A stretch of 47,542 bases of DNA from Fonticula alba ATCC 38817 (GCA_000388065.2 KB932214.1); one strand, 5' to 3'. Positions 32,616 through 47,542 are shown, numbered from the stretch's first letter. Notes: generated by a model not told the origin, from the sequence alone. Numbers and translations are program-made.

Positions 32616-33717
32616 AGCTCGAGTGCCAGGGCAGCAAAAGGGGGCGGGAAGGAGACGGGGCGGTGGGGTGAGGCGAGTGCAGGCGGGCGGTGCCTCGAGC
32701 AGCAGCGGGCCTGCCGGCGGGTGGGTGTCTCTTGGCCGGGATCCCCCCAGGGTCGACTTGCCGGATCGGAGGCGGGGGAGACGCCGGCATCCGATGGGGC
32801 CCGGGCCGAGACGGCATACCAGCGCCGCAGCACCAGCGACATAATTTGTCGAGGGGGGCGGGGGGCAGGAGGCAGGGCGGGGCGAGGCACCGTGGTCAAA
32901 ACACATCTGGTCGCGTGTGCTTCGATCGCCGAGACATGGCACGATCGGGGATGTTCCCCCCCCCCCCTCCCCTTCCCGGCCCGGGTGTCTCCCCCCTCGG
33001 GGCCGGGGGTGACGTATACTGGCGGGGATTGCCGATCTTGTCCGTGGTGCCCGGGGGAGAGGGGCCATGTCGCGCGGCAGCGTGATGTGCTCTTCCCGGG
33101 GGGATTGGGTATCGGACCAGAGGCGCGCCGGGCAGCGAGGCAGATGCATGGGTCGCCCCGGGGCAGGCCGAGTGGACAGGGTGGCGGGAGGTAATTACAA
33201 TGGTGGCCCGGGTCGGGCTCGGTGCATGTGCATGTGTGTATGTGGCGCTTAACAGATGCCGGTGGCTGGTGCCCGGCGTGGGCGTGTCCGGCAAGACTCG
33301 GGCCAGGCCCTTTTCGGGACCGGGGCCGGCGCCGGGGGGGGGGGGGGGTCAAGACGGGCCGAGGGGCGAAATCAGGAACGCGGGACGCGATGCGGCGCAA
33401 CTTGCCCGGCGCCAAGAACCTCGACACCCATGGATTGCGATCTCGGCGCATCGTCTTGCCCTTGGGTCGCGCGTCACCCCCCCCCCTTCCGATCGTCTCG
33501 CTCGGCCCAGACGGCCTTGGTCATGTTGGAGGAGGAAAAAAGTCCGAGCGGCGGGAGGGGGGGAACAAACGGCCCGGCGCAGGGGCGGGGGGGAGGGGGA
33601 CTTCGTAGGTGTATCCCACCGAGCGGACGTATTTGGGCAACAGCAGAACACCCGTGGTTGCCGACCGCCACCGGGCACAGCCCGCCAAGGTGTCTCCCCT
33701 TCTCCCCCTGCCGCTCC

Positions 33718-33778: not shown

Positions 33779-34303
33779 ACATAACCATAAATAAATCTGC
33801 CGGCAGCACTTTGTCGGCTCGCCCCGGGGAATAATGTGGGGGAGGTCGGTGTGGTTGTGGGCGAGGAGGAGGTTGCTGTCGTGGCGTGTGATGTGGGAAT
33901 GGTATTGCCAAATAGGGCGTGACTTCCTGGTGCCAACGATGCTTGTCATTCGTTGGGACTGATCGGCATGAAGCCGCATTGGCCGCCTTTCCCTGCGCCA
34001 AGAAGAGGGAGGCCATGTCCCTGGGGCCCTCTCGTCTGCCGCGTCCGGGAGCATGCCCGTCCAGGGGTGGAAAGCAGCACACCAGCCTTTTGTGCGAGAT
34101 TGCCAGAGGCGGCATCCCGAGCACGTTGTATCCCTCTCCTTCTCCCTCCCTCTCTTTCTCCCCCTCCCCCAGACCGCCCTCCCTTTTTCACGAGCCAGCC
34201 CAGCTCCAAGAGCCTAAGTTGCATCGACACGCACGCACGCACGCACGCACGCACGCACATCCACTCGCCCAACTTGATCGCCTGCTTTTAGCCATACGCC
34301 GAG

Positions 34304-35668
34304 ATGTTCGCACGCCTGGGGCCACTGGTCCTCCGGCGCCGGCCTGCATCTCGGTCGCTGGCGATGCTGGCCGCGTCGCGATCGGCGCCGCCGTCACCGA
34401 CGGGCCCCCCATCGAGCACCGGCCCCTTGGCAGCCCCGCAGCAGCCGGCACCGAGTCCGAGCAGCCGGTCCCCCGCGCCACGGCCAGGATGCCTGCCGGG
34501 GGGCAAGCGCTTGCCGGCGTCCGTGTGGCTTATCCAACTCCCGGAAGTCCCCCTGACGCCGGGCGAGCTCTACTGCCGGGACATCGAGGCCGGGCGAAAG
34601 CCCCTTCCGAAGGGCTTTGACTCGGTCAATTGCCTGCGGCTGCTGCTGCGGCTGTTGGGCTTGCAGATGCAGGCGTGCACCATGATGATGCTCGGCCGGC
34701 TGATGGGGTTCGACCAGAACACCATCCAGGTGCTGAGCCGGGAATATATCCTGCAGGGGCTGGCGATCCCGCCGCCGGGGCGCAAGACGGCCCCGCGCGC
34801 CGTACGCACGGTCCAATTCTCGGAGGAGGCCCTGGCCGAAGTGGAAGACCTGATGACCCGCGACCCGCCGGTGCCGGTGAAGGTGATCGGGTATCTGCTG
34901 GGGTTACCCCACCCGATCTTGTATCGCGGCATTGAGACCATGCTGCCGGATTTGATGCCGCCGGTGGAAGATCGGGGGCCCTGCCTGTGGCGCCTGCTGA
35001 TGCTGGCTTCCGTGCGCCCGCCGATGCACCTCCGGCAGATGGCGACGCTGCTGTCCGTCTCGCAGAGGGCCATCCACCGTGCGGTCGACATTTCGGCCTT
35101 CATGCCGACCTTGCAGATCGACAAGCCCTCGGCCTCGCAGTGGCGGCGGCTCCGGGAACTCCTGGCCCAGGAGGACCCGGTGCTCTCCCTGGCGGAGATC
35201 GCCGACCAAACCAACATCAACATCCGGACCCTGATGAGCTGGGGCCCATACATTGACCCCTCCTATGCGGCCCGGGCATGGGGGCAGCTGGACCAGATGC
35301 ATCCATTGCGATCGGGCTCCTCGCCGGCCGGCATGGCACTTCACAGGGGCACCACGGGCCAGACCCTGAGGGCCTTTCAAATTCGCTGGTATCGCCAGCT
35401 TTATCTGTTTGCCAAGCCGCCGGGCGCATCGAACGCCGGCTTGAAGTCGCACAATCGGCCACGCCAGCTGGCGACGATCACCATGGGGGACTATCTCGAC
35501 CGGTGTTGTCCCCTGCCGCTGGAGGCCATGGTGTCCATGGCGGCCGATGAGGGGGCCGACGCGGCGCCCCGCTTGGGCCCCGGCGACGATGTGCACTCCG
35601 AATCCCTCGCCCGGGACGACGCCCAAGACGGCGGGGGGGCTGCTGGCGCCGGCGTCGGGCCCGCCACG

Positions 35669-35701
<33 letters not shown>

Positions 35702-36424
35702 ACCACCGCCACCAGCGACCATGGCAACTGGTCGTCGGAGGACGAGCGGCTGCTGTGTCTCCTGTCTCTGCGGCCGGCCTTGTCGATCTTCGAGATATCG
35801 GTGCAGATGTCGGTCCCGAAGCACACCCTGCAGGAGCGCATCCGTCGGTTGAAGATTGACGAGGGCCTCCGGTCGAATGCCCCCTACATGCGCTTGACCG
35901 CCAGGGGGATCGCCGACTTCCGCCAGCTGGCCCTGGAGGCGGATCCCTCGAAGGCCGGGCATACGCGACGCTCGGTGCGGGACATTGCCCGGAAGTTGGG
36001 CCGCTCGCCGGATGAGGTGTTCTCCGCGCTGCACCGGTACTGTCCGGAGTACTTTTTCCTGGGGCTTCCGCCGGAGCTCGCGTCCGGCCCGGCGGGCATG
36101 TATGTCCCGGAGGAAAAACTGCAGCCCCTGCTGGCGGCGGTGGCGAACCAGTACCCGGTGCCGGTGTTGCACCAGGTGGCGGTGGATCTGGCCTGCTCCC
36201 TGCCCCAGGTGATCAACTCGCTGCGGGTCCATCTGCCGGACATGCCGCTGCCGCAGTACTCTCGGACCTTTTTGTATCGTCTCCCGGAGCTGGAGGCCTT
36301 CCTCAGCCAGGGGACCTGGCCATCACGGAGAAAGATGGCGGCGCATTTTGGCATCAGCCTGTACACACTCTCGCACGCCTTGCAGACCATCGGCTATGTG
36401 CCCGCTCAAAAGTCGACTGTGTAG
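34304..36424 (+). CDS. Uncharacterised intronless protein with ~8 tandem HTH-like repeats and a mitochondrial-presequence-like N-terminus (family copy A), 706 aa
   Basis: ATG-to-TAG ORF, collinear with 37513-39567. Repeats such as LSLAEIADQTNINIRTL, SVRDIARKLGRSPDEV, VLHQVAVDLACSLPQV, SRRKMAAHFGISLYTL. Confidence 0.8.
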
Positions 36425-36585
36425 AAGATCGGAAGAGCACACGTCGGAGCTGGAGGCCTTCCTCAGCCAGGGGACCTGGCCATCACGGAGAAAGATGGCG
36501 GCGCATTTTGGCATCAGCCTGTACACACTCTCGCACGCCTTGCAGACCATCGGCTATGTGCCCGCTCAAAAGTCGACTGTGTAGA
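36286..36585 (+). repeat. 140-bp direct duplication (36286-36425 and 36446-36585) of the 3' end of copy A, probably artefactual
   Basis: The two copies read identically by eye and are separated only by the adapter. Confidence 0.9.
36426..36445 (+). other. Illumina TruSeq adapter fragment (assembly artefact)
   Basis: AGATCGGAAGAGCACACGTC equals the first 20 nt of the TruSeq adapter and sits between two identical 140-bp copies. Confidence 0.95.
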
Positions 36586-37512
36586 TGTGTCTGCTGGGGA
36601 AAGAGAGCGAGTGGGCGAGAGCCTCGCGGGTGTTTGGTGTTTCGCCGCCGGCGCGGTGCGCTGGCCTAGAGGGAGACCCGGGCCCTGTACTTCGCGACAA
36701 TTGAGAAAGGCTCCTCGCTGCTGTGTGTGTCTTCCTGTGTATGTGTGTGTGTGTGCGCGCGCGATCTGAGCTTGCATGCCGGGTGGGGAGGGGGGGCGGG
36801 GGGGGGGCTGTTCGTCAGACACAATGGTGCCTTCAGGACGCCATCGGTCCGGGAGCCGTTGCTGACAGGCGGGTGCCGGCGACGGGGGCCGAGCGTGCAG
36901 TGCGCCTACCTGGCGGTGAGGTGCACACAAGAGTGGCTGGTCCTCCGGGCATCCGGGGATGGAGGGAGGGGGTGCATGAAAGTGCCTCGTCCCCGGGGAG
37001 GGAGGAGGGGTCTAGACGCGTGGCGGCACGGCCTTCGGGGCCAATCGAGCAGGCAGCCGGCTCCCGAGCGCCGGGGGGGCTCGGGCGGCGGTGCCGTGTG
37101 TTTGGATTCGCACGTGCGTTGGCATCTCGAGGCACACGCCTGTGCATGGGGGTGAGATTTCCGGCCCATGCCATGCCAGGAGGGCGGGGCTGGGGGCGGC
37201 TCTCCGCGGCCCGGGGCCTCCTGGCATGGGGGGGCCGCGCCTTGCCCGGGGAAGGGGAACGGCCGGGGGATGGGGCCCGACCACGCGTTGAAAGGCACGT
37301 CCCACTTCCAGGATGGAAGCTGACATGCTGGCCATGCTAGATCGACTACTCGCTTCCCCTCCTCGCTCTTCGTCGCTCGCCCCCCCCCCCCCCCTTCCAA
37401 CATCATATCCCTTCTGTGATTTTTTTCTCTCTCATCCCCCCCCCTCCTGGCCGGCGTCACACAGGCAGCCTCGTGTGACACTGGGACCACCTCCTCGGTG
37501 AAGCTGCTCCTG

Positions 37513-39567
37513 ATGCTCTTCGGCTTCAGGGCTGTCTTTTGTCGCACCATCGGGCTTTCGGTCAGATGGCAAGCAGCTGCTCGGTCGCTGCCGGGTTTCG
37601 TGCCGCGGAAGGCCGGCTCCCCATGGGCGCCTGCGGGCTGGAGTCGGCCGGCCGGGGCCGGTTGCCCTGTGCGCGAGGCATCCTCCACGGCGGTCGGGGC
37701 CCGAGACACGGGTGGAGATGACCGCCCATGTCCCGCCGGCGTTCATGGTGGGGACACCTATGTGGCCCTTTCGCCGGTGGTCGACCGTCGGCCGGCTGGA
37801 TGCGCGGGGACGCGCCTGTGCCGGGACATCGAGGCCGGGCTGGCCACCATGCCGCGGGCATTCCAGGATGTTGAGGACTTTCGCCTCTTCCTGCGTCTTG
37901 CCGGGGTCCGGAATGTCTATCTGTCGACGACCAGCGAGGCATCCATCGGCCGACTGGTCGGGCTGGATGTCACCACCACGCGACACCTGTTGGACCGGTA
38001 TGGCAAGGACTATGGCATTATGCCGGGATCCTGTGCCTGGGAGGGAGATGTGATGCCGGAGCATGCGACCTTTAAGGATGCCATGTGCCTGGCTCGGCGG
38101 GACCCGCCGATATCGCGTCAGCTCCTCGCGCGACTGACAGGCATGTCCACTGCCCAGACGAGGAGGGTCCTGGAGCATCATTTGTCGAGGGAGGAGCTGG
38201 CAAGGTTCCACCAGCACAGGGTGTGCCTCGGGCGCTTGGGGAAACTCCTGACCGTGGTTCCTGCCCAGCCGCTGGCAATCATGGCCGAGCTGCTGTCATG
38301 CACCCCGGGGGAGGTGCGAGCCGCCCTGGCGGAGCACTTCCCATGGTTCGAGTTTGACGATCGGGAAAGGATGAACCTGAAAAGCATCTGCCTGATTCGC
38401 CATGCGCTCGACACCGCGATGCTCGCGCCATTCTCGACCACTCCGCTGGTGGAAGACATGGCCAAGAAGACGGGCGTGACGCAGCGGAAAATCCACCAAC
38501 ATGGCCCGGGGCTGTGTCCGAAGTATATCATCGCCCTGAATGGGCCCCTGTCATCCGGGCACTTGGCCCTGCTGCGCTCGGAAATGGCCTCGGGCGAGCT
38601 GACCCTGAGCAAGGCGGCCGGGATGCTGAATCTGCCCATTTGGATGACGCACTGGTACATCAGGTACTACTTCCGGAATGCCCACATTCCGAGATCGGCG
38701 AGCCAGCCGATGACGCCGGCCTCGCCGAGCCAGGCCAGTCCCAGCCTCACCCTGGTGGAGTATTTGGATAGAACCCTGCCCGGTCCGAGCGTGTGGCTGG
38801 AGACGCAACAGGCCCTGCATTTGGGGGAGCAACCATCCGCGGGTCATTCGCTGGAGCAGCTGCTTGTCGAGGAGCTGCTGGGCGTCCTTGCGCTGAGGCC
38901 GCCACTGTCGAAGCCGGAGATGGCCATGCAGCTGGGGCGACCCCGGAGGGAGCTCCGAGCCGACTTTCCGGCAATGCGGGCAAAGGGGCTGTGGCAGAAC
39001 TGCCGCCTGGATCTGGAGTTGCCGGTGGAGGACATTTTGCACCTTCGGAGCCTCGGGGAGCAGGTGCACCCGGCCGGCGGGCGCATGCGCTTCACGGTGC
39101 GCGAGATTGCACGGCGGCTGGGTCGCCATCCGGACTTGGTGTTCTCGATGCTTCACCGGTATTGCCCGGAGTACTTCTTCCTTGCCCTGCCACCGGGGTC
39201 GGGCTCTGGCCCGGGGGGGATGTATGTGCCGGAGGGCAAGCTTAATGCCCTGCTGGTGGCGGTGTCAAACCGGTATCCCCCGCCGCTGCTGCACCAGGTG
39301 GCCGTGGATTTGGGCTGCACCCTGCCGCAGGTGATAAATTCCATCCGGAGGCAGAATGTCCATGCGGATGCTCGGCTGGAGGCGCCGCTTTATGCGCGGC
39401 ATCCGGCTGGACGCTATTTCGAGGTGGCCACCATCGCGGCCACATGCCACTCTCCGCTGAGGCATGCGGCCAGCCTGGTGCTGGGGTCTTCGACTTCGAC
39501 GATCAAGGCACTTGATTTTTTCCTGGAGAATAGACAATACTCGCCGCCCGGTGGTGCCTCCACATGA
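37513..39567 (+). CDS. Uncharacterised intronless protein with ~8-9 tandem HTH-like repeats and a mitochondrial-presequence-like N-terminus (family copy B), 684 aa
   Basis: First in-frame ATG is at 37513 (the ORF track starts at GTG 37498). Shares LCRDIEAG, RDPP and HRYCPEYFFL..GMYVPE.KL..LHQVAVDL.C.LPQVINS with copy A. Confidence 0.8.
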   Translation: MLFGFRAVFCRTIGLSVRWQAAARSLPGFVPRKAGSPWAPAGWSRPAGAGCPVREASSTAVGARDTGGDDRPCPAGVHGGDTYVALSPVVDRRPAGCAGTRLCRDIEAGLATMPRAFQDVEDFRLFLRLAGVRNVYLSTTSEASIGRLVGLDVTTTRHLLDRYGKDYGIMPGSCAWEGDVMPEHATFKDAMCLARRDPPISRQLLARLTGMSTAQTRRVLEHHLSREELARFHQHRVCLGRLGKLLTVVPAQPLAIMAELLSCTPGEVRAALAEHFPWFEFDDRERMNLKSICLIRHALDTAMLAPFSTTPLVEDMAKKTGVTQRKIHQHGPGLCPKYIIALNGPLSSGHLALLRSEMASGELTLSKAAGMLNLPIWMTHWYIRYYFRNAHIPRSASQPMTPASPSQASPSLTLVEYLDRTLPGPSVWLETQQALHLGEQPSAGHSLEQLLVEELLGVLALRPPLSKPEMAMQLGRPRRELRADFPAMRAKGLWQNCRLDLELPVEDILHLRSLGEQVHPAGGRMRFTVREIARRLGRHPDLVFSMLHRYCPEYFFLALPPGSGSGPGGMYVPEGKLNALLVAVSNRYPPPLLHQVAVDLGCTLPQVINSIRRQNVHADARLEAPLYARHPAGRYFEVATIAATCHSPLRHAASLVLGSSTSTIKALDFFLENRQYSPPGGAST

Positions 39568-39648
39568 GGAACGGGCGTGTATCTCCTTGTCTTGGATCCA
39601 TGTGGGTGCATGAGTGTGGGGTGTCTCCGCGCGGGGTGCGCGGGGGGT

Positions 39649-39687
<39 letters not shown>
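39649..39687 (+). repeat. 39-nt poly-G run
   Basis: Read directly, ~80 nt downstream of copy B. Confidence 0.85.
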
Positions 39688-39688
<1 letters not shown>

Positions 39689-40219
39689 ACCGGACAGGGG
39701 TGGCGAGGGTCGAGGGCATGTCCGGGGAGTTGTCATGGCCGTCGTGGCGGATAGGGCATAGCACGCAAACCAGGGGGCAGGGCAACGCGGCACGCGGGAG
39801 GCACGGCCGAATCGGGGGGCGGGAGTGGCTCCTGGGGAGATGGCCGCCCGGCGGGGGGTGGGGGGGGCTTGAGGCGTGGCTTCGTCGCGAGCATGGGAAC
39901 TGAAGGCGAGGGCAGGGGAAGGTCCCCTCCCGGGTACATCTCCCCGGTCCCGGGGGTGGGGGAGGGGCGAGCAGCAAGTCGATTGCCTTGCAATGGACCG
40001 CCGCTCCCTCGGATGGCTGAGCCCTCGGCCCCTCGCGGTGCCGTCCGACATCGACCCAGTGCTTGGCCATGGATGCGTCTTCCTTTCGTGACACCGGCAC
40101 CCTGGCTCCGGCTATTTGCGGAAGGACCCGGATTCGCACCTCTCGCCCATGGGGTTTTTTTCGTGTCATTTGTGCCTCTCCCTCGCGGGAAAGGAGACCC
40201 CATTGTGGCCACGGATCGG

Positions 40220-41990
40220 GACACAGGCGCCGAGATTGCCCGCTGACTGTGAGAAGGCGGCTGCGGCCTGCTGCGGCGCTGGGGGGTAGTGCGGTTCCCC
40301 TGTGCCTGCCGCTGATTGCTTCGGGTGGGACATCACTCCCGCTACGATGCTGAGCCGCGGCCGGGGAGAGGCAGGCTCTGGTGCGACAGTGGGCGAACGG
40401 GGGGGGGGGGGGCTGCGTGGGTTGTAGAGGGCCTCGGTCGGGACGAGGCAGCCGACGACGGCCCCTAGCCGGGGAGATTCATCTTGGTGCTGGCCACCGG
40501 CGAATGATGCTGTGTCCAGCCGGGAGGGGGCGGAGGAAGGAGCGGGCGGGAAGGGTCACCCAGGTAGTCGGGCACCATTGGTCGGCGCCCGGAAATGGGC
40601 CAGGACGTCGGCGAAGGGGCTGTCGCGGGGAGAGGCAGGGGAGATGGCCGGTGCCCGGGCGATGGGGCAGCTCCGCATGTCTTGCGCCAGGGTGCTCCCC
40701 CGAGCATCCGGCGGTCGAGGACTCGGTGACACAGCCCGGGCGAGATCCCCCCACACGAGGGTGCGCCTTTCCCTGGCTGGCGCGTCTCACGTCGGGGCAA
40801 GTGTCATTTCCATTGAAAGAGCACCTCCTCGAGGCGGGGGTGCCCATTGCCAGACAGCGTCCAAGATGGGCCCGGCCGGGGGCGACACACGCCGGTGTCG
40901 TGGGCGTCCACCTACCGAGGGCGGGATGAGACATCCATTCGACTGTCGGCGGCTTTGGTGCCAGATGAGGGGGACAAAAAATGTGCCCGCCCACGGGTGT
41001 GTCCTTTGGTGTCCTGGATGCCAGTCGCAAAGCAGAAGAGGCTACGGGCCATGTTGGCCGACTGGACACGCGTAGTGACACCACGGCCCGGGGAGGCGTG
41101 TGCCCGGGCCGGAGGCATGCCTGGCAATCCACCCAAAGCCAACAGCTCGATGTGGAGGACATCGCCCAAATCCGTTGGGCGAGCTGCCGCGGGAACAGGT
41201 GGGCTGATTGTGCACTCGGTGGCAAGGGCGTTGCCTAGACGTGGGCAACATGGCCCGGCGTGCGGGATGGCGGAGAGCATGACCCGGGTGGCACACCATG
41301 TGGGTGCCACGAGCCGGGATGGCTGCTGCTCTTGAGAAAGCCGGCACCGGCGCGGCGGCTGGATCCGCCCAAGCGTGTCGGGCGAGTGACGTTGGGCAAG
41401 TGCACCGGGCGCTTCTGGTTGGCGGAGTCGCTGGAACAGGGGCAGCCCAAGGGTGAGGGATGGGGGCGCGATCGAACACCGGAGCGCCTGGCGATCGCCG
41501 GTGCGCGCCCGATTGACCTGGCGCAACACGACTCTGGGACGGGGGTCGGCCCGTGGCTTTGGGGGCCGGCCTTTGGCCAGGGTCCGGAGGGCCAGTGACA
41601 GCGTCGGGCCGGCCGATACCGGCGATCGCTGAGGCGGGCCGCTGTCTCTCCCGATGGCGAGATTCTCCTCTGGCGGTGCCGGGGCAGGCAGGTGGTCCTA
41701 AGCGGTCGAGGGCGTGCGGCCCACGGCGGGGGGAGATAATTGGCGATGTGGGCTGGCGTCCGGGCGTTCACGCTGCCATGCTGCAGGGGCATTGCCTGGG
41801 GTGCCTCCCTCGGACCCTGGAGGCGGGGCTCGGCGACAGGAGGAAGGAGGTGTCGGCGGACCAGCCCGGGTGCGCGGCCGAGGGCGGCGGATGGCCGGGC
41901 GAGGCTGTGTTGTGTCGACGCGCATGTGCGCCTTGGTGCGAGTGGCGCAGCCCAATGTATCGGGCGTTGCACGCTGCTTTGGCGATTCGA
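40220..41990 (+). pseudogene. Decayed third copy (C) of the HTH-repeat family
   Basis: Collinear remnants in shifting frames: PEH..D..RDPP..LARLT (40699-40791), KRLRAMLA (41036-41059), LR/PLSLPMA with a +1 shift (41629-41659), EIIGDVGWRPGVHAAMLQGHC (41733-41795), PNVSGVARCFGDS (41951-41989). Boundaries approximate. Confidence 0.65.
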
Positions 41991-42560
41991 ACAGGAGCAG
42001 CTCCCGGCCACGAGGTGTGGCATCTCAGGAAGCGGAGTCAGCAGGCTGTTTGGCTGTGAAAATGGCCCCCTCCCCGGACGATGTCGAGCGAGGCTGCTCC
42101 GGGGGATGGGCGAAAATCCGCTAAATCCAGGGGAGAGCACAAGTTTCCACATGGCGGGGGGGGGTGCATCTTCGGCCGATCGTTTCTCCAAGCAAGGGTC
42201 ACACAAGGCGAGACCGGGCGGCTGGCAGGAAGGAGGAGAAGGGGGGACATGGAGTAAGCGGGCCCACGTCGATGGTACTGTCGCAAAGGAAGAACGGCCA
42301 CCATTTATTGAGTGTGGTGGCAAAAAGCACATGCCAATGTAGATGCCCTGGCTGCTCGATTTTCGATGTACTTCCTCGCGAGTGGGGGGCAAGGGAGAAA
42401 GGGGGTGTTTAAATGTTCATAAACATACACGGATGTTTTCTGTTTTTCGGGGAGTTTGGTGCGCGGCAACTGCGTGTACTTGGTCCACCCCGCTCCGTTT
42501 GTCCCCCCCCCCCCGGCCGAGGCGCATGAATGTTTTCCCGATCCACGCGGTCCCTGCCTG

Positions 42561-42835
42561 TCCTCTTCTTTTTTTTCTTCTTTCTCCCCCTCTCTTCTTC
42601 TTTTCTCTTCTTTCTCCCCCTCTCTTCTTCTTTTCTCTTCTTTCTCCCCCTCTCCTCTTTTTGATCCTTCTCCCTCCCTCTCTCTCTCCCTCTTTTTTAT
42701 CCTTCTCCCTCTCTCTCTCTCTCCCTCTCTCCCTCTCTCCCTCTCTCCCTCTTTTTGATCCTTCTCCCTCTCCTCCCCCTACCCTCTCCCCTCCCTCTCC
42801 CTTCTTTTCCTCGTCCCTCCCCCCTATCAAGCCTC
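42561..42835. repeat. Polypyrimidine/polypurine tract with a 30-nt unit repeated about 3 times
   Basis: TTTCTCCCCCTCTCTTCTTCTTTTCTCTTC repeats from 42581, followed by (CT)n and (CTCC)n. Confidence 0.85.
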
Positions 42836-44229
42836 TGTCCTGTTCGCAAGAGGGTGTGACATGGACTTTGGACTTGCCCCCCCCCCTCTCGCACTCGCAC
42901 CCCGGCATGTGTGTGGTGCTCCTTTTAGGCGCTGGTCCCCCCTCGTCCGAGCCCTTCTGTTTGCCTGCTCCCTCGGTGCGCGCCTTTGCGCCTCAGGGAG
43001 CTGCCTATGACTCGGCAGGAGCACAGGGTCCCTGCGTAGGGGAGGCCCTCCGATACCCTTTCTACGCCTCTCTCTCTCTTCCACTCTAGGTGCGCATGGT
43101 GCTGCTGGCCCGGCGAGGGGCGGATGCGGGAGGCTCGATGGCGCTCTTGGAGGGTGCCGCCCTCCCTCGCCGAGCAACTCGAAGCACGCCATCACAAGGC
43201 CTGGCTCCTTTCCTTCTGGCCCTTAACCGGCGCATCTGGACATGCGCTTAGGCGCGCGCATGCCCCTCTCTCCCTGTTGTGTCCGCCCCCCACAGGGCCC
43301 TTTTCTCTGCTGCGCCCCTCTTTGGGGCCGCCCTCCGGTGGCTGACTTTCATGCCCGTGTGCCCGCCGCCACCGAGCCACGTGGCATCCATCCAGCACTG
43401 GGGGGGGGTGTAGCGCGAGCCCCTTTCTCCTCCCTCTCCTCTTTCGTGTCGCCTGCATCCACCCACCGTTTCTGGCCCTTGGCAGCTTGCTCAGTGCCGT
43501 GCGGGCGCGCATGCGCACCGCTTCCTGGCGCGCCCTTGCGCCAGGGCTTCCGTCAGTCACTCGATCTGTCGCCTTCTGTGCATGGCCGCCCTGCCTCGTG
43601 GCGGAACGTGCTACTATTCTGGCCGAGGGGACGGTCAGTGCGCGGGGCTTAAAGTCCCCTCGCTCCCCCCTCCATGCGGAGCGCGCGATGTCGGCGCGGC
43701 GAGCGGCAGGCCTGTCGTCTGTCTGGCGGCCCCCCTCGTGGCATGCCTGTCTGTCGGCCGAATCCCTGGCCAACCCGTGCGGAGGGTCTTTCTCGAGGAA
43801 TGCCGGGAAACACCCTTTCTCAAAGCCCCGAGATAATCCGCGCTGGCTGCGAAGGGTGGCGGGAAAGGGCGTGCCAGCAGCCCTGGCAGCCGGAGGGTAG
43901 GGGGGTGACGCCAGTGGAAGAGGCGGGGCACCGGCAGGGGGAAGGGGCATGGTTATGGCCTGTGGTCTCTCAGGGTGCATCCCACAGGAGGACAAGGTGT
44001 CTTCAAGGCAATGTGGCGATTGCTCGAGCGCAGGATCATGCACGGGGAGGATACCGGCCACATACATTGAACGCCCCCTTCGGGGACGAGGGACGCCACT
44101 TTGGGCGTCGGGGGCAGTGTCGCTGCCCTGAAACTTCCACGTGGGCACCAGCAGGAGCATTACGGCGGTGGCGGGTCCTTCGTCTGTGTGTTCCAAAGGA
44201 ACAGTGGAAGATGGGAGGGGCACACGAGG

Positions 44230-46240
44230 GCCGGCCTCCGGCGAGGGCGGCCCATGTGCCATGGCCGGGCCGCGAGACATCGAGGAAGCGGGTCACCTCC
44301 GGCGAGATACCTTCGGGGGGAGGTGGGAAGAGCTCGGCTTTAACTGGTGCCATTCAGCCTCCTTGAGCCCCCCCGTCGAACCCTCCTCCGGGACGTTGAG
44401 GCTGGCTCGGAGCGCCCGCTGTTAGGGCAGGCCTTCGGGCGGGCATGCGTCCCCTGAGGACATGAGCGCCCTAACCGGCCGCAAGGCTTTGTCAAGGCCG
44501 GAAGACCTCGCTCATCGCGAGAGAGAGGCTGGTGGTCGATCGCAAAGGGCCGAATCTAGGGAACAGCCGGCGAGCGAAACGACAGGGGCTCCCGGGAGGA
44601 TCCCATCCTCGGACGGGTGGGGCGGGGCGCCCGCGCGGGAGTCTTTATGCACAGTGGCCCACAATCCGCTCATTCACATGTCCATTATGCGAGGTCATCA
44701 TGTATGCGATGGGTTGGAGGGTTGTGTTTTTGAATCACATGCCTGTTCCCGTGGGGGAGGGTGATGGCGTGTTGTCGTGGTTCGCGTCGATCGTCCCACG
44801 GAGCGGGCCTCACAGCGCCCTCATCCTCCCAGCGGGGACCGGCCGCTGGTGGTGCGGATGTCGTCCTGCGCAGGGGAGACACATCTCGGGCCCAAGGGGA
44901 AGCCACAAAAAGTGATATCATTCTGCGTCTCCTTTTCTCCTGCCCTTGTATTCCCTGTTTATGCTTGATCAGTCTGTTGCTGGCTGGTTTTGGTGCCCTC
45001 GGCCGGAGCCCGTCTCCTGGGGGCAGAGAGCTGGCCATGGGGAGCATGGTATCCCCAGCCGGGAGGAGGGCCGCGAGGAGGGGGGGGCTGTCGCGGCTCT
45101 GCTTGGCCCTCTTGCACGCCCACGATCAAGGGCAGGCCAGCAACCGGCTATTACTTTCCTTCGCTATGGTAGGAGCGGCCCGATGCGGGAGCGGCTGTGG
45201 TAAATGCATCGACACCAGCAGTCCCCACGACAAAGAAGGCAGAGGAATGTGCATCTGTCGCGTCGGTCGAAGATTAACGTTCATAGCCATGCATCCCGCA
45301 GTTCGGTAGAGATGGTGCAGTGCCGCAGACAGACCGGCAATGGGCGGGCCGAAAGGTCATCCACCGGGGATGTGGGATGGACCGGCTGGTGATCGAGAGT
45401 ATGAGAGTCCGCCGCAGCCGGGAGGCTGGGTCTTCCGCCGTGGGATCGGTCTGTGGCATGGCTGGCGTTGGGCCTGGGCACTCGGTGGCCGGGGGTCCTG
45501 TCGGGATTATCCCCGAGAGGCGCGCCGGTGCAGGGGAGTGAAGATCGCCGTCCGGTGTTCCGGCCGCTGGTTCGATGGCAATCCTCGCTGCAGGGGCATC
45601 GGCTGAGAAGAAGATGGCCGCCCTCTTGGTACATCGGCCGGGGGCGGGTGTATTCATCATCCACGAGGTCTGGAACTGTCGGATACCCCTCCGCCGAAGG
45701 ACACCATGGCGATGGCCCACTCATCTGGTCGACAATGACCGGCACATGGGGCGGACAAGACCTGCCGGGGGGTATGCGGACATCGGGGCACCGTCGGGTC
45801 AGACGGGCCGGCGCTGCCATGCTGTCAGATGCATGAGCATGCGGAAGTGACTCTGGATGGGGGCGTTGTCCGCGAGCCGAACCTCCGCGCCGAGGACAAG
45901 ACCCGCTGGTGGGGCGGAGCTGGCCAGAGGAAAAGGTGGTGCGGGTGCTGGGCCTGCGCACCGGGCCGTCGGACAAGCTTCCTCGGTGCCTGAACCAAGC
46001 ACGGCGAGTTGGCTGTGATGGAACGGCCATGGGCATCGGATCCCCGAACGACGGCCTGCCTCACCAGGGGTACTTTGTCGGGCTGGAGTTGGGCGGTAGA
46101 TGTGGCAGTCTCTCCCAAATGGGATCCCCTGGAATGGGAGGGCTCTGGGTGCCGAAGGGCTGGTCTGCCTGCATATCTTGCTGTGTGAGCGTACATTCGC
46201 CCAGCAAAGATGGTGCCCTCGCTAGCTGGTACAAGGGTCC
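44230..46240 (-). pseudogene. Decayed, inverted fourth copy (D) of the HTH-repeat family
   Basis: Collinear remnants: LYQLARAPSLLGE..LTQQDMQA (46234-46160), ARLT, PTVPDLVDDEYTRPRPMYQEGGHL (~45682-45610), GLP*QRALRASLNVPEE (stop at 44422-44424), HQLKPSSSHLPPKV. Boundaries approximate. Confidence 0.6.
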
Positions 46241-46396
46241 AGTGCGAGGACGAATCTGCGAGCAGGGGGGGGGGGGGGGGCAGCGGAGGACGTCATTGCG
46301 TCGTGGAGGGGGGGGGGTTGCCTTCTGGGGGGCGGGGGCGGGGGGGGGGGGGGGGGGGAGGGGGGCGCGCGGGGTGGGGGGGGGGGGGGGGGGCGG

Positions 46397-46449
46397 NNNN
46401 NNNNNNNNNNNNNNNNNNNNNNNNNNNNNNNNNNNNNNNNNNNNNNNNN
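46397..46449. other. Assembly gap (N run)
   Basis: 53 N, with G runs on both sides. Confidence 0.99.
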
Positions 46450-47084
46450 GGGGGGGGGGCAACCGGCGCATGAGTCTGTGTTTTGATGTGTGGGCCAGAG
46501 CGGGAGCGGCATCAGAGACCCTTGGAATGTCTCCCGTCGAACGGGGGCTCTAGGGTGGCTGTGTCTGGCGGGAGCGATCGACGGCAACCGGGGAGCGAGC
46601 CTCTCCTGTCCGCGACTGTCGAAGTGGCCGGCGAGAGGGGCTGCCGGATTGAGTGAACATCACTATTTCGTCGGCACAGCTCGTAGTCCCGCTGCCTAGG
46701 GCCCGCGTCGGAGGCGTGGTCCAGGCTGGGGGGGGGGGGGGCATTGGACCTGCCTTTGTCGTCGCGGGCGCTCCAGCCAGATGGCGAGGGGGATGTGCGC
46801 AGTGGCATGGGCTGGACTCGGGACGGGCGAATCCTCGTCCGGGAGACAATCCATAGACTGTGCTGCGCCAATCGCAGCAAATACCTGGTCGCGATCCGAC
46901 ACGGGAGCCAGGACCGTCTGTGAAACCGAGCATGCTGTGGAGTCCCTGGTCCGCGGTCTCCTCCTGTAAAAGGGGTATCTCAATTACCTGTTGGTCCGTT
47001 GCTCCCAGAGTGGGCAGGTCTACACACGCTCGGGGGAAAATCGCAACGGCAAGTAGGATCGAGCATGAGTGGTCATGCGGATAT

Positions 47085-47141
47085 TTTGAGAGGGGGAGAG
47101 AGGGGGAGAGAGGAAGAGAGAGGAAGAGAGAGGAAGAGAGA

Positions 47142-47173
<32 letters not shown>
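47085..47173. repeat. Polypurine tract (AGGAAGAGAG)n(GA)n
   Basis: Read directly. Confidence 0.85.
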
Positions 47174-47175
<2 letters not shown>

Positions 47176-47542
47176 CAGCGGAGCACTTGGAAGAGGAGGG
47201 AGAAGTGGCAAGGAAAAAGGAGGACAGAGGCGGCGGTGGTGGCCGGTGGGTGGAGGTGCGGGTCTGTCCGCGTGACCAGTTTGCGGAATCCGGGACCATC
47301 GGGGAAGTAGGCGGGCTACGAGGATGTGGCAAGTGGGAGGGGGTAGGTGGGCGCGGAGAGGGCAGGCATGGGGATCCTAGGCGGGGGAAAATATGCGCGG
47401 AGGGGGGGCTGTCGGGGCTTTGAAGTGGCGGGAGGAGAGGCCTCGGCGAGCGTGCGTGTGTATCAGAATCAATTGGGGTCCAGTAGAACGAGGATAATAG
47501 AGAAATTGGAGTAAAAAGCCGCGGCGGGGATATCGCCAAAAT

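What the first reader, a model, noticed from the sequence alone, without database searches (positions are those of the whole stretch)
34304..46240. Cluster of an unassigned tandem-HTH-repeat protein family: two intact and two decayed copies
Seen: four collinear homologs in 12 kb (A 34304-36424 +, B 37513-39567 +, C ~40220-41990 + decayed, D ~46240-44230 - decayed). They share ordered landmarks: LCRDIEAG, RDPP..LARLT, RLR.LL, LRP.LS..MA, EIA..LG..P..V..ML..YC, GLP..VPEE, HQ..LP.V. I recognise no named family. Inference: a lineage-specific family evolving by birth and death in a local array, built from repeated nucleic-acid-binding-type modules and apparently sent to mitochondria. It could be a functional analogue of organellar helical-repeat regulators (PPR, mTERF) built from a different fold.
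Basis: partly seen in the sequence, partly recalled or inferred. Interest (0 to 1): 0.88.

Follow-up and report, generated by a model that had tools for sequence, protein, structure and literature searches.

The report
Fonticula-only tandem HTH-repeat protein family
Two neighbouring, expressed genes of the amoeba Fonticula alba, plus one decayed copy beside them, belong to an undescribed species-restricted family of proteins built from eight or nine classic DNA-binding helix-turn-helix modules, which carry leaders that look like mitochondrial import signals.

Summary
The window is the end of Fonticula alba scaffold KB932214.1. Copies A (34304-36424 +) and B (37513-39567 +) are real paralogs and both are transcribed. 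Copy C is a real but badly decayed relic, with four collinear blocks at 40654-41706 (+). A and B alone do not detect it; a 15-sequence family profile and other paralogs do. Copy D (minus strand, 46240-44230) is not confirmed. Only non-significant traces lie elsewhere: 45326-45918 (+) and 43930-43715 (-).

The family has at least 9 full-length genes and at least 6 fragments. All come from F. alba in a profile search of 1.84 billion representative proteins. No catalytic or transposase domain was found.

Each protein has an acid-free, Arg-rich leader, a conserved CRDIEAG..PLPxGF motif and 8-9 three-helix units with the classic A-x3-G-x5-V HTH signature. Third helices of most units are hypervariable (14-27% identity). 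Units 7-8 and their linker are about 75% identical.

Tandem pairs recur at another locus, where the core looks gene-converted.

Mitochondrial import is plausible (leaders at 10 of 10 starts) but untested. The PPR/mTERF analogy is speculative, because the units look like duplex-DNA readers.

The scan flagged similar poly-HTH proteins elsewhere in this genome.

The parts
34304..36424 (+). Copy A: intact gene, 706 aa from the first in-frame ATG. The annotation (P0001) starts at the second ATG, 34364.
   Evidence: ORF. Identical to P0001 from residue 21. RNA-library contigs cover 34431-36716 while the intergenic depth is 0. AF2 model has mean pLDDT 68, and 80-96 over residues 80-330.
34304..34483 (+). 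Leader of A. MFARLGPLVLRRRPASRSL... has no Asp or Glu before residue 81. It is presequence-like and low-confidence in the model.
34625..35254 (+). HTH units U1-U4 of A (residues 108-150, 174-213, 228-263, 277-317), preceded by the conserved CRDIEAG..PLPxGF motif (residues 86-107).
   Evidence: Three-helix elements in the AF2 model. Off-diagonal self-alignment probabilities 74-94%. Per-helix conservation.
35735..35848 (+). HTH unit U6 of A (residues 478-515). Its third helix is 14% identical among paralogs.
   Evidence: VIA-align match to the AsnC/Lrp HTH, Z 6.4, rmsd 2.1 A over 50 aa.
35900..36232 (+). Near-invariant core of A: units U7-U8 plus their linker (RYCPEYFFLxLPP..GPGGMYVPE..LHQVAVDL.C.LPQVINS).
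   Evidence: 74-79% mean pairwise identity among paralogs that are about 30% identical overall. 73-77% nucleotide identity to B 39057-39348.
36269..36388 (+). HTH unit U9 of A (residues 656-695), variable.
   Evidence: VIA-align match to the second HTH of Mos1 transposase, Z 6.3.
36285..36585 (.). Perfect 160-nt tandem duplication spanning the stop codon of A. Probably an assembly artefact. It does not change the A protein.
   Evidence: TRF gives 1.9 copies at 100% identity. tBLASTn re-hits A 662-706 at 36447-36581. Contigs of two DNA runs and one RNA run join 36284 to 36445.
37513..39567 (+). Copy B: intact gene, 684 aa. The public annotation (P0004, 516 aa) stops short at 39060.
   Evidence: ORF. 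RNA-library contigs run unbroken over 37407-39540. Annotated end.
40654..41706 (+). Copy C: decayed, untranscribed relic covering profile positions 120-486. It has frame changes and at least 3 in-frame stops and lacks the conserved core.
   Evidence: No RNA run holds 40300-46200. No gene is called there.
45326..45918 (+). Possible further trace of a family member: two collinear weak blocks, profile 83-138 and 261-291. Not significant.
43715..43930 (-). Possible further trace: two collinear weak blocks, profile 52-67 and 113-127. Not significant.

Best explanation
A and B are two transcribed, intact members of a protein family found so far only in Fonticula alba.

Architecture. Each protein (about 620-800 aa) has three parts: an N-terminal acid-free, Arg-rich leader; a conserved CRDIEAG..PLPxGF motif; and a string of 8-9 canonical three-helix HTH units of about 50-60 aa each.

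How it most likely works (inferred):
- The array binds nucleic acid, most likely duplex DNA, one HTH per short segment.
- The hypervariable third helices of units 2, 3, 6 and 9 give each paralog its own target.
- The near-invariant units 7-8 and their linker perform a function shared by all paralogs, either a common site or a common partner.
- The leaders suggest that the proteins are imported into mitochondria, where they would act as target-specific regulators of the organelle genome.

Evolution. The family grows by tandem duplication. Its core is kept uniform, in part by gene conversion, and it loses copies by decay (relic C).

Status of the steps. Shown: paralogy, transcription, repeat architecture, HTH fold and signature, the conservation pattern, the taxonomic restriction in the searched databases, and relic C. 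Inferred: nucleic-acid binding, the division of labour between units, and mitochondrial localisation.
For: - Paralogy.
- Transcription: the libraries labelled RNA cover both ORFs, but show depth 0 in intergenic stretches and hold none of 40300-46200.
- Family range: 16 F. alba proteins at E<=1e-10 and nothing else close among 1.84 billion representatives.
- Repeats: hhalign self-matches at 74-94% probability.
- Fold: the AF2 model shows 8 clear three-helix units plus a degenerate ninth. Single units match AsnC/Lrp, MarR and Mos1 HTH domains at Z about 6 and rmsd about 2 A over 50 aa.
- Unit consensus over 69 units: L..LR.LL, then Pro (58 of 67), then ..E-I-A-x-L-L-G-L-S-x3-V, ending in a [YH]-x-P-E cap. 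This is the classic A-x3-G-x5-V signature.
- Pfam: whole-protein scores pass the gathering cut-off for HTH_11 (A, 27.9 vs 25) and HTH_23 (P0002, 35.3 vs 24.6).
- Conservation: third helices are 0.14-0.27 identical in U2, U3, U6 and U9, against 0.74-0.76 in U7 and U8.
- Gene conversion: tandem neighbours in L004 share 359 nt of the core at 96.9% identity, but only 65% or nothing elsewhere. They are the only supported sister pair in the tree.
- Leaders: 10 of 10 full-length starts are acid-free for at least 16 residues and Arg-rich. Two of these require an in-frame ATG 23-24 codons upstream of the annotated start.
- Cleavage motifs: RxFSS-type R-3 motifs occur in 5 of 13 members.
- Background: 5 of 15 neighbouring genes have acid-free starts.
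Against: - No experiment or dedicated predictor supports import. A 68% GC genome makes Ala/Arg/Gly/Pro-rich N-termini common, and the control set is only 15 genes.
- No target sequence is known.
- Inter-unit geometry is uncertain (pTM 0.43). No multi-domain match in PDB is significant (best E 0.25-0.3).
- Individual unit hits to Pfam HTH models are weak.
- A canonical HTH suggests DNA binding, but tandem winged helices can bind RNA. SelB was the top, non-significant, PDB hit.
Confidence: 0.55

Rival explanations
1. The family is a set of nuclear sequence-specific DNA-binding proteins: a fast-evolving transcription-factor or repeat/transposon-repressor family, in the manner of clustered KRAB zinc-finger genes. 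The N-terminal leaders would then be a by-product of GC-rich coding sequence.
For: - The units carry the canonical DNA-binding HTH signature.
- Hypervariable recognition helices sit beside a constant core.
- Copies are clustered, gap-rich loci show duplication and decay, and three loci lie within 40 kb of scaffold ends.
- Another F. alba multi-HTH protein, P0017, has an acidic, KRPR-containing N-terminus that is not presequence-like.
Against: - The presequence-like leader is kept in all ten full-length members even though its sequence is not conserved.
- I noticed no obvious nuclear localisation signal in the sequences I read, but I ran no formal search for one.
Confidence: 0.28
2. The family is a relic or accessory gene of a mobile element: a transposase-derived DNA-binding array, or a target selector like the TniQ-HTH arrays of Tn7-like elements.
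For: - The weak distant hits are bacterial TniQ+HTH arrays, nine IS630-type HTH repeats in one protein, and Conidiobolus proteins that start with a Mos1-transposase HTH.
- Copies are dispersed over at least 10 scaffolds.
Against: - No catalytic domain is present in any member.
- There are no terminal inverted repeats, and the paralogs inspected share no flanking genes or extra copies.
- Paralogs are about 30% identical with very long branches, so there has been no recent transposition burst.
- The distant hits are generic multi-stretch HTH similarity only.
Confidence: 0.07
3. The finding is not a real protein family, only chance long ORFs in GC-rich DNA.
For: Long spurious ORFs are common here on both strands.
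Against: - Collinear conservation holds across at least 9 full-length paralogs.
- RNA coverage is confined to the ORFs.
- The predicted folded units are confident.
- In a near-identical strain all three indels are intergenic.
Confidence: 0.01

Closest known systems
Canonical three-helix / winged HTH DNA-binding domains (Pfam HTH clan: HTH_11, HTH_23, HTH_24, AsnC-type, MarR, Sigma70_r4_2)
   Same: Each unit is a three-helix bundle with the A-x3-G-x5-V signature. Units superpose on AsnC/Lrp, MarR and Mos1 HTH domains (Z about 6, rmsd about 2 A). Whole-protein scores reach the Pfam cut-offs for HTH_11 and HTH_23.
   Different: The family strings 8-9 units in one chain with no dimerisation, ligand or catalytic domain. 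It has its own extra motifs (CRDIEAG..PLPxGF, RYCPEYFF..GPGGMYVPE, a [YH]-x-P-E cap). No single Pfam family describes it.
Tandem-HTH array proteins elsewhere: Conidiobolus coronatus 'Mos1 transposase HTH domain-containing' proteins (P0025, P0035), bacterial TniQ+HTH arrays (P0018, P0023) and an IS630-HTH x9 protein annotated 'transcriptional antiterminator' (P0015)
   Same: They share the architecture of many HTH units in a row. They are the next-best sequence hits (E 1e-14 to 1e-3, several matched stretches) and fold hits (AFDB E 1.6e-5).
   Different: They lack the family's conserved N-terminal motif and U7-U8 core. They carry an HTH_48 or TniQ head that this family lacks. Similarity is at the level of the generic unit, not an orthologous array.
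Myb/SANT repeat arrays (SNAPc4, Reb1) and the four tandem winged helices of SelB
   Same: They are arrays of small three-helix nucleic-acid-binding domains. They appear among the top PDB hits.
   Different: The hits are not significant (E >= 0.3, TM < 0.25). The unit consensus has no regularly spaced Trp as in Myb. SelB binds RNA hairpins, for which there is no evidence here.
Organellar helical-repeat regulators (PPR, mTERF, OPR)
   Same: The similarity is only in the proposed logic: nuclear-encoded, presequence-bearing, modular, lineage-expanded families evolving by local duplication.
   Different: They have a different fold, a solenoid of 30-38 aa helical hairpins, against independent 50-60 aa HTH bundles here. 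No Pfam hit to any of them. Localisation and targets are untested here.

Membership tests
HTH superfamily (Pfam HTH clan) | Three-helix unit with the helix 2 - turn - helix 3 signature Ala-x3-Gly-x5-Val/Ile | tested here: met
   In the consensus of 69 units, A (36/69), G (41/68) and V (34/68) fall at the right spacing. AF2 shows 8-9 three-helix units. VIA-align gives Z 5.2-6.4 to AsnC, MarR, Mos1 and NarL HTH domains.
HTH superfamily (Pfam HTH clan) | Score at or above a Pfam gathering cut-off for an HTH model | tested here: met
   A scores 27.9 on HTH_11 against a cut-off of 25. P0002 scores 35.3 on HTH_23 against 24.6. These scores are summed over weak repeats. Single units rarely pass on their own.
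Transposases (DDE, IS630/Tc1-mariner, IS30, ISL3) | A catalytic domain following the HTH DNA-binding part | tested here: not met
   Only HTH-type models hit A, B, P0002 and P0003. No DDE, rve or other catalytic family appears.
PPR / mTERF / OPR organellar helical repeats | Tandem 30-38 aa helical-hairpin motifs recognised by the family models | tested here: not met
   No Pfam hit at E<=1. The repeat period is about 50-60 aa with three helices.
Sigma-70 factors | Regions 2 and 4 at family thresholds | tested here: not met
   Only Sigma70_r4_2 hits, below its cut-off (20.7 vs 25.7). Region 2 is absent.
Mitochondrially imported proteins (presequence pathway) | N-terminal acid-free, Arg-rich amphipathic presequence with an R-2 or R-3 cleavage motif | tested here: inconclusive
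   10 of 10 full-length starts are acid-free and Arg-rich, two of them via upstream ATGs. RxFSS-type motifs occur in 5 of 13 members. 5 of 15 neighbouring genes also have acid-free starts. No dedicated predictor was available and there are no localisation data.
Conidiobolus / bacterial tandem-HTH array proteins | Shared head domain (HTH_48 or TniQ) and collinear homology over the whole array | tested here: not met
   Matches come as 3-8 separate stretches at E 1e-14 to 1e-3. The head domains are present in the hits but absent in this family.

The most novel reading that the evidence does not exclude
Fonticula alba has evolved a class of organellar gene regulators unlike any described: nuclear-encoded, presequence-bearing proteins that read mitochondrial DNA or RNA with a programmable string of 8-9 bacterial-type HTH modules. 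Variable recognition helices would set the target and an invariant two-unit core would dock to a common machine. Together with the other poly-HTH proteins the scan flagged in this genome, this would be a fold-independent counterpart of PPR, mTERF and OPR families.
Probability: 0.3. Interest if true: 0.85.

Novelty: new variant of a known kind. Interest (0 to 1): 0.58.

Why it matters
The HTH is the best-understood DNA-reading module. Long single-chain arrays of it are rare in eukaryotes and essentially unstudied.

This family offers a natural series of at least 9 paralogs with a constant core and hypervariable recognition helices. That is the pattern expected of a modular recognition code.

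If the leaders really direct import, it would show that lineages can build organelle-specific regulators from a DNA-binding fold, and not only from helical solenoids.

It would also be an entry point into mitochondrial gene control in the sister lineage of fungi. Even if the proteins are nuclear, a species-restricted, clustered, gene-converting DNA-binding family is a useful case of rapid regulator evolution.

Tried and rejected
- tBLASTn with A and B alone, at strict and very loose settings, found nothing usable in C or D. The loose run was only noise.
- A 4-sequence profile gave only E 0.06 for C.
- Real-DNA controls showed a 27.7-bit tBLASTn hit to be near noise level.
- My own frameshift-tolerant profile-to-DNA dynamic programme did not separate C from control DNA. 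With strict penalties it saw one block. With loose penalties control segments scored up to 59.5 against 42.9 for C. I dropped it in favour of HMMER E-values plus a collinearity test.
- The profile against PDB sequences gave no hit.
- Foldseek against PDB gave nothing below E 0.25, for both the whole model and the C-terminal four-unit model. Swiss-Prot models gave nothing below E 0.08.
- The Atlas feature search gave only sub-threshold leads to bacterial multi-HTH clusters (0.77).
- Long ORFs in the tail (41238-42392 -, 43195-44280 -, 42343-43086 +, 46553-47539 -) have no Pfam hit and no RNA support, so I rejected them as genes.
- A subtelomeric location was considered. The window ends at the scaffold end but shows no telomere repeat.
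- No flanking homology or extra copies occur around P0002 and P0003.
Full report
**Origin and setting.** The window is 66-73% G+C. The protein of ORF A is identical to an annotated Fonticula alba protein. It lies on scaffold KB932214.1 of assembly GCA_000388065.2, and the window's last base is the scaffold's last base. No gene is called downstream of B.

**The observation: A and B.**
- A (34304-36424, 706 aa) and B (37513-39567, 684 aa) are intact ORFs.
- They align collinearly: 53% identity over the last 155 aa (6e-37) and 25% over 334 N-terminal residues (4e-17).
- Contigs of two 2012 libraries labelled RNA cover both ORFs (A 34431-36716, B 37407-39540). Their depth is zero in the intergenic stretches 36900-37299 and 39700-40099.
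- No RNA run holds even a twentieth of the words of 40300-46200.
- So both genes are transcribed and the tail is silent.
- The B transcript runs unbroken past 39060, where the public model (516 aa) stops, so that model is too short.
- A's first in-frame ATG is 34304, 12 nt after a stop. The annotation uses the second ATG.

**The observation: C and D.**
- With A and B as queries, tBLASTn finds nothing in the tail at E<=0.01. A 4-sequence profile gave only E 0.06.
- I then collected the whole family (below) and built a 15-sequence profile. With it the + strand shows four collinear blocks with correct spacing:
  - 40654-40860, profile 120-187, E 1e-5;
  - 41006-41110, profile 234-266;
  - 41308-41463, profile 332-383, E 0.02;
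  - 41620-41706, profile 458-486.
- Other paralogs hit the same places: P0009 at 4.7e-6 across three in-frame stops, P0005 at 4e-5, P0008 at 5e-4, and P0006 at 0.002 in a different frame.
- It is the only chain of three or more collinear blocks in 91 kb of control DNA.
- C is therefore a real, old, frameshifted relic. It is closer to other paralogs than to A or B, and no trace of the family's most conserved block remains.
- For D (minus strand, 46240-44230) I found no landmark, no HSP and no profile hit.
- Two two-block collinear chains exist in the tail: 45326-45918 (+) and 43930-43715 (-). None was seen in the other roughly 125 kb examined. Each block is non-significant (E 5-64), so I report them only as possible traces.

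**The family.**
- A profile search of 1.84 billion representative proteins found 16 proteins at E<=1e-10. Fifteen belong to this family and are all from F. alba.
- Full-length or near full-length members are H696_05449, 05870, 06061, 04187, 04689, 05961 and 05305, plus A and B. Fragments are 05959, 06059, 02523, 03118, 05862 and 06131, and P0020 is a further family fragment at E 5.6e-7.
- The sixteenth protein and the weaker hits, down to E 1e-3, match in several separate stretches. They are generic tandem-HTH proteins:
  - bacterial TniQ+HTH arrays;
  - a protein with nine IS630-type HTH repeats;
  - Conidiobolus proteins headed by a Mos1-type HTH;
  - one other F. alba protein, H696_00212.
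- A literature search found no paper describing the family.

**Architecture.**
- hhalign of the family against itself gives off-diagonal matches at 74-94% probability, with shifts of about 60 columns.
- AlphaFold2 with the 15-sequence alignment gives mean pLDDT 68, and 80-96 over residues 80-330. It shows eight clear three-helix units plus a degenerate ninth, a disordered leader (1-63) and a low-complexity middle (413-473).
- VIA-align superposes single units on AsnC/Lrp, MarR, NarL and Mos1 HTH domains (Z 5.2-6.4, rmsd about 2 A over about 50 aa).
- An alignment of 69 units gives the consensus L..LR.LL, then Pro (58/67), then ..E-[LIM]-A-x-L-L-G-[LV]-S-x3-V, ending in [YH]-x-P-E. This is the classic HTH signature with a family-specific cap.
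- The unit profile weakly hits only canonical HTH regulators in PDB.
- Whole-protein Pfam scores pass the cut-offs of HTH_11 (A) and HTH_23 (P0002).
- No catalytic or other domain is present.
- No multi-domain PDB or Swiss-Prot match is significant.

**Conservation pattern.** Mean pairwise identity among the nine long paralogs:

| Region | Identity |
|---|---|
| N-terminal motif and helix 1 of U1 | 0.57-0.64 |
| Third helices of U1, U2, U3, U6, U9 | 0.38, 0.27, 0.19, 0.14, 0.14 |
| U7 helix 3, U7-U8 linker, U8 helices 2 and 3 | 0.76, 0.75, 0.79, 0.74 |

The putative recognition helices of most units are thus the fastest-changing parts, while two units and their linker are nearly fixed.

**Evolutionary dynamics.**
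- The tree is a star with very long tips (A 2.5 changes per site). A and B are not detectably sisters.
- In scaffold KB932217 a copy split into two ORFs (H696_06059 and 06060) sits directly upstream of H696_06061, on the same strand. These two are the only supported sister pair.
- They share 359 nt of the core at 96.9% identity, but 65% or nothing elsewhere. This points to gene conversion of the core.
- Between A and B the core is 77% identical over 248 nt.
- The loci are gap-rich. Three lie within 40 kb of scaffold ends.
- A near-identical strain in 2025 DNA runs differs by 10 substitutions and 3 indels over 6 kb. All three indels are intergenic.

**Leaders.**
- Nine of twelve annotated N-termini have no acidic residue in the first 30 positions and have 2-6 Arg/Lys there, 4-6 in eight of the nine.
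- The two exceptions among the full-length genes have an in-frame ATG 23-24 codons upstream that gives MLRLVCRQLG... and MLAHIGRAWWRR....
- All ten full-length members can therefore start ML/MF, hydrophobic and Arg-rich.
- Five of thirteen members carry an RxFSS-type motif.
- Of 15 neighbouring genes, 5 have acid-free starts, and two of those look like signal peptides.
- The property is conserved while the sequence is not, which is what a targeting peptide predicts. But the genome's composition and the small control leave this open.

**Interpretation.**
- The family is a new, species-restricted, expressed set of single-chain HTH arrays.
- The most economical mechanism is modular nucleic-acid recognition: variable units set the target and the invariant core supplies a shared function.
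- I give about 0.55 to the organellar version and about 0.28 to a nuclear DNA-binding family.
- A mobile-element origin gets about 0.07, because there is no catalytic domain, no repeats at the gene borders and no young copies.
The fold and signature point to duplex-DNA reading.

**Relation to earlier scan notes.** Other first-stage notes flag many poly-HTH proteins with presequence-like leaders on other pieces of this genome. Two of them have lengths equal to H696_05961 and H696_04187. These notes are unchecked and were used only as leads.

Noticed in passing
window 36285-36585: A perfect 160-nt tandem duplication repeats the last 45 codons, the stop codon and 20 nt of A. Contigs from two DNA runs and one RNA run carry only one copy, so it is probably an assembly artefact.
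   Followed up: partly
window 37513-39567: The public gene model for B (516 aa) ends at 39060. The ORF, its homology to paralogs and unbroken RNA contigs all continue to about 39540-39567.
   Followed up: yes
window 36773-36811, 39626-39690, 46257-46397, 33307-33348: Long poly-G tracts (up to 46 nt) sit shortly downstream of A and B and next to the N gap (46398-46450). Poly-C tracts lie at 37380-37394 and 42485-42514. These may be a general intergenic feature of this genome or an assembly hazard.
   Followed up: no
window 42551-42802 and 47088-47175: A TC-rich microsatellite block and a GA-rich block form an imperfect inverted pair 4.3 kb apart (75-86% complementary). Both are low-complexity, so this is probably chance.
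   Followed up: no
L004 7513-9534 and 10001-12070 (KB932217.1): A family copy is split into two annotated genes (H696_06059 and 06060) directly upstream of its sister H696_06061. The 359-nt core is 96.9% identical between them while the rest is 65% or unalignable, which suggests gene conversion.
   Followed up: partly
L002 9932-10000 and L003 9929-10000: In-frame ATGs 23-24 codons upstream of the annotated starts of H696_05449 and H696_05870 would add ML..R presequence-like leaders. The annotated starts may be wrong.
   Followed up: partly
window 34100-40099 in run X5 (2025, labelled organism B) and soil, sediment and sludge metagenomes X8, X14-X16: Near-identical DNA (10 substitutions and 3 indels in 6 kb) occurs in recent runs filed under another organism label and in environmental samples. 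This indicates a second F. alba strain or a contaminant.
   Followed up: no
P0017 (H696_00212, 900 aa, another scaffold): A second, distantly related F. alba multi-HTH protein (E 2e-10, 5 stretches) has an acidic, KRPR-containing N-terminus, not a presequence-like one. Not all poly-HTH proteins of this genome share the leader.
   Followed up: no
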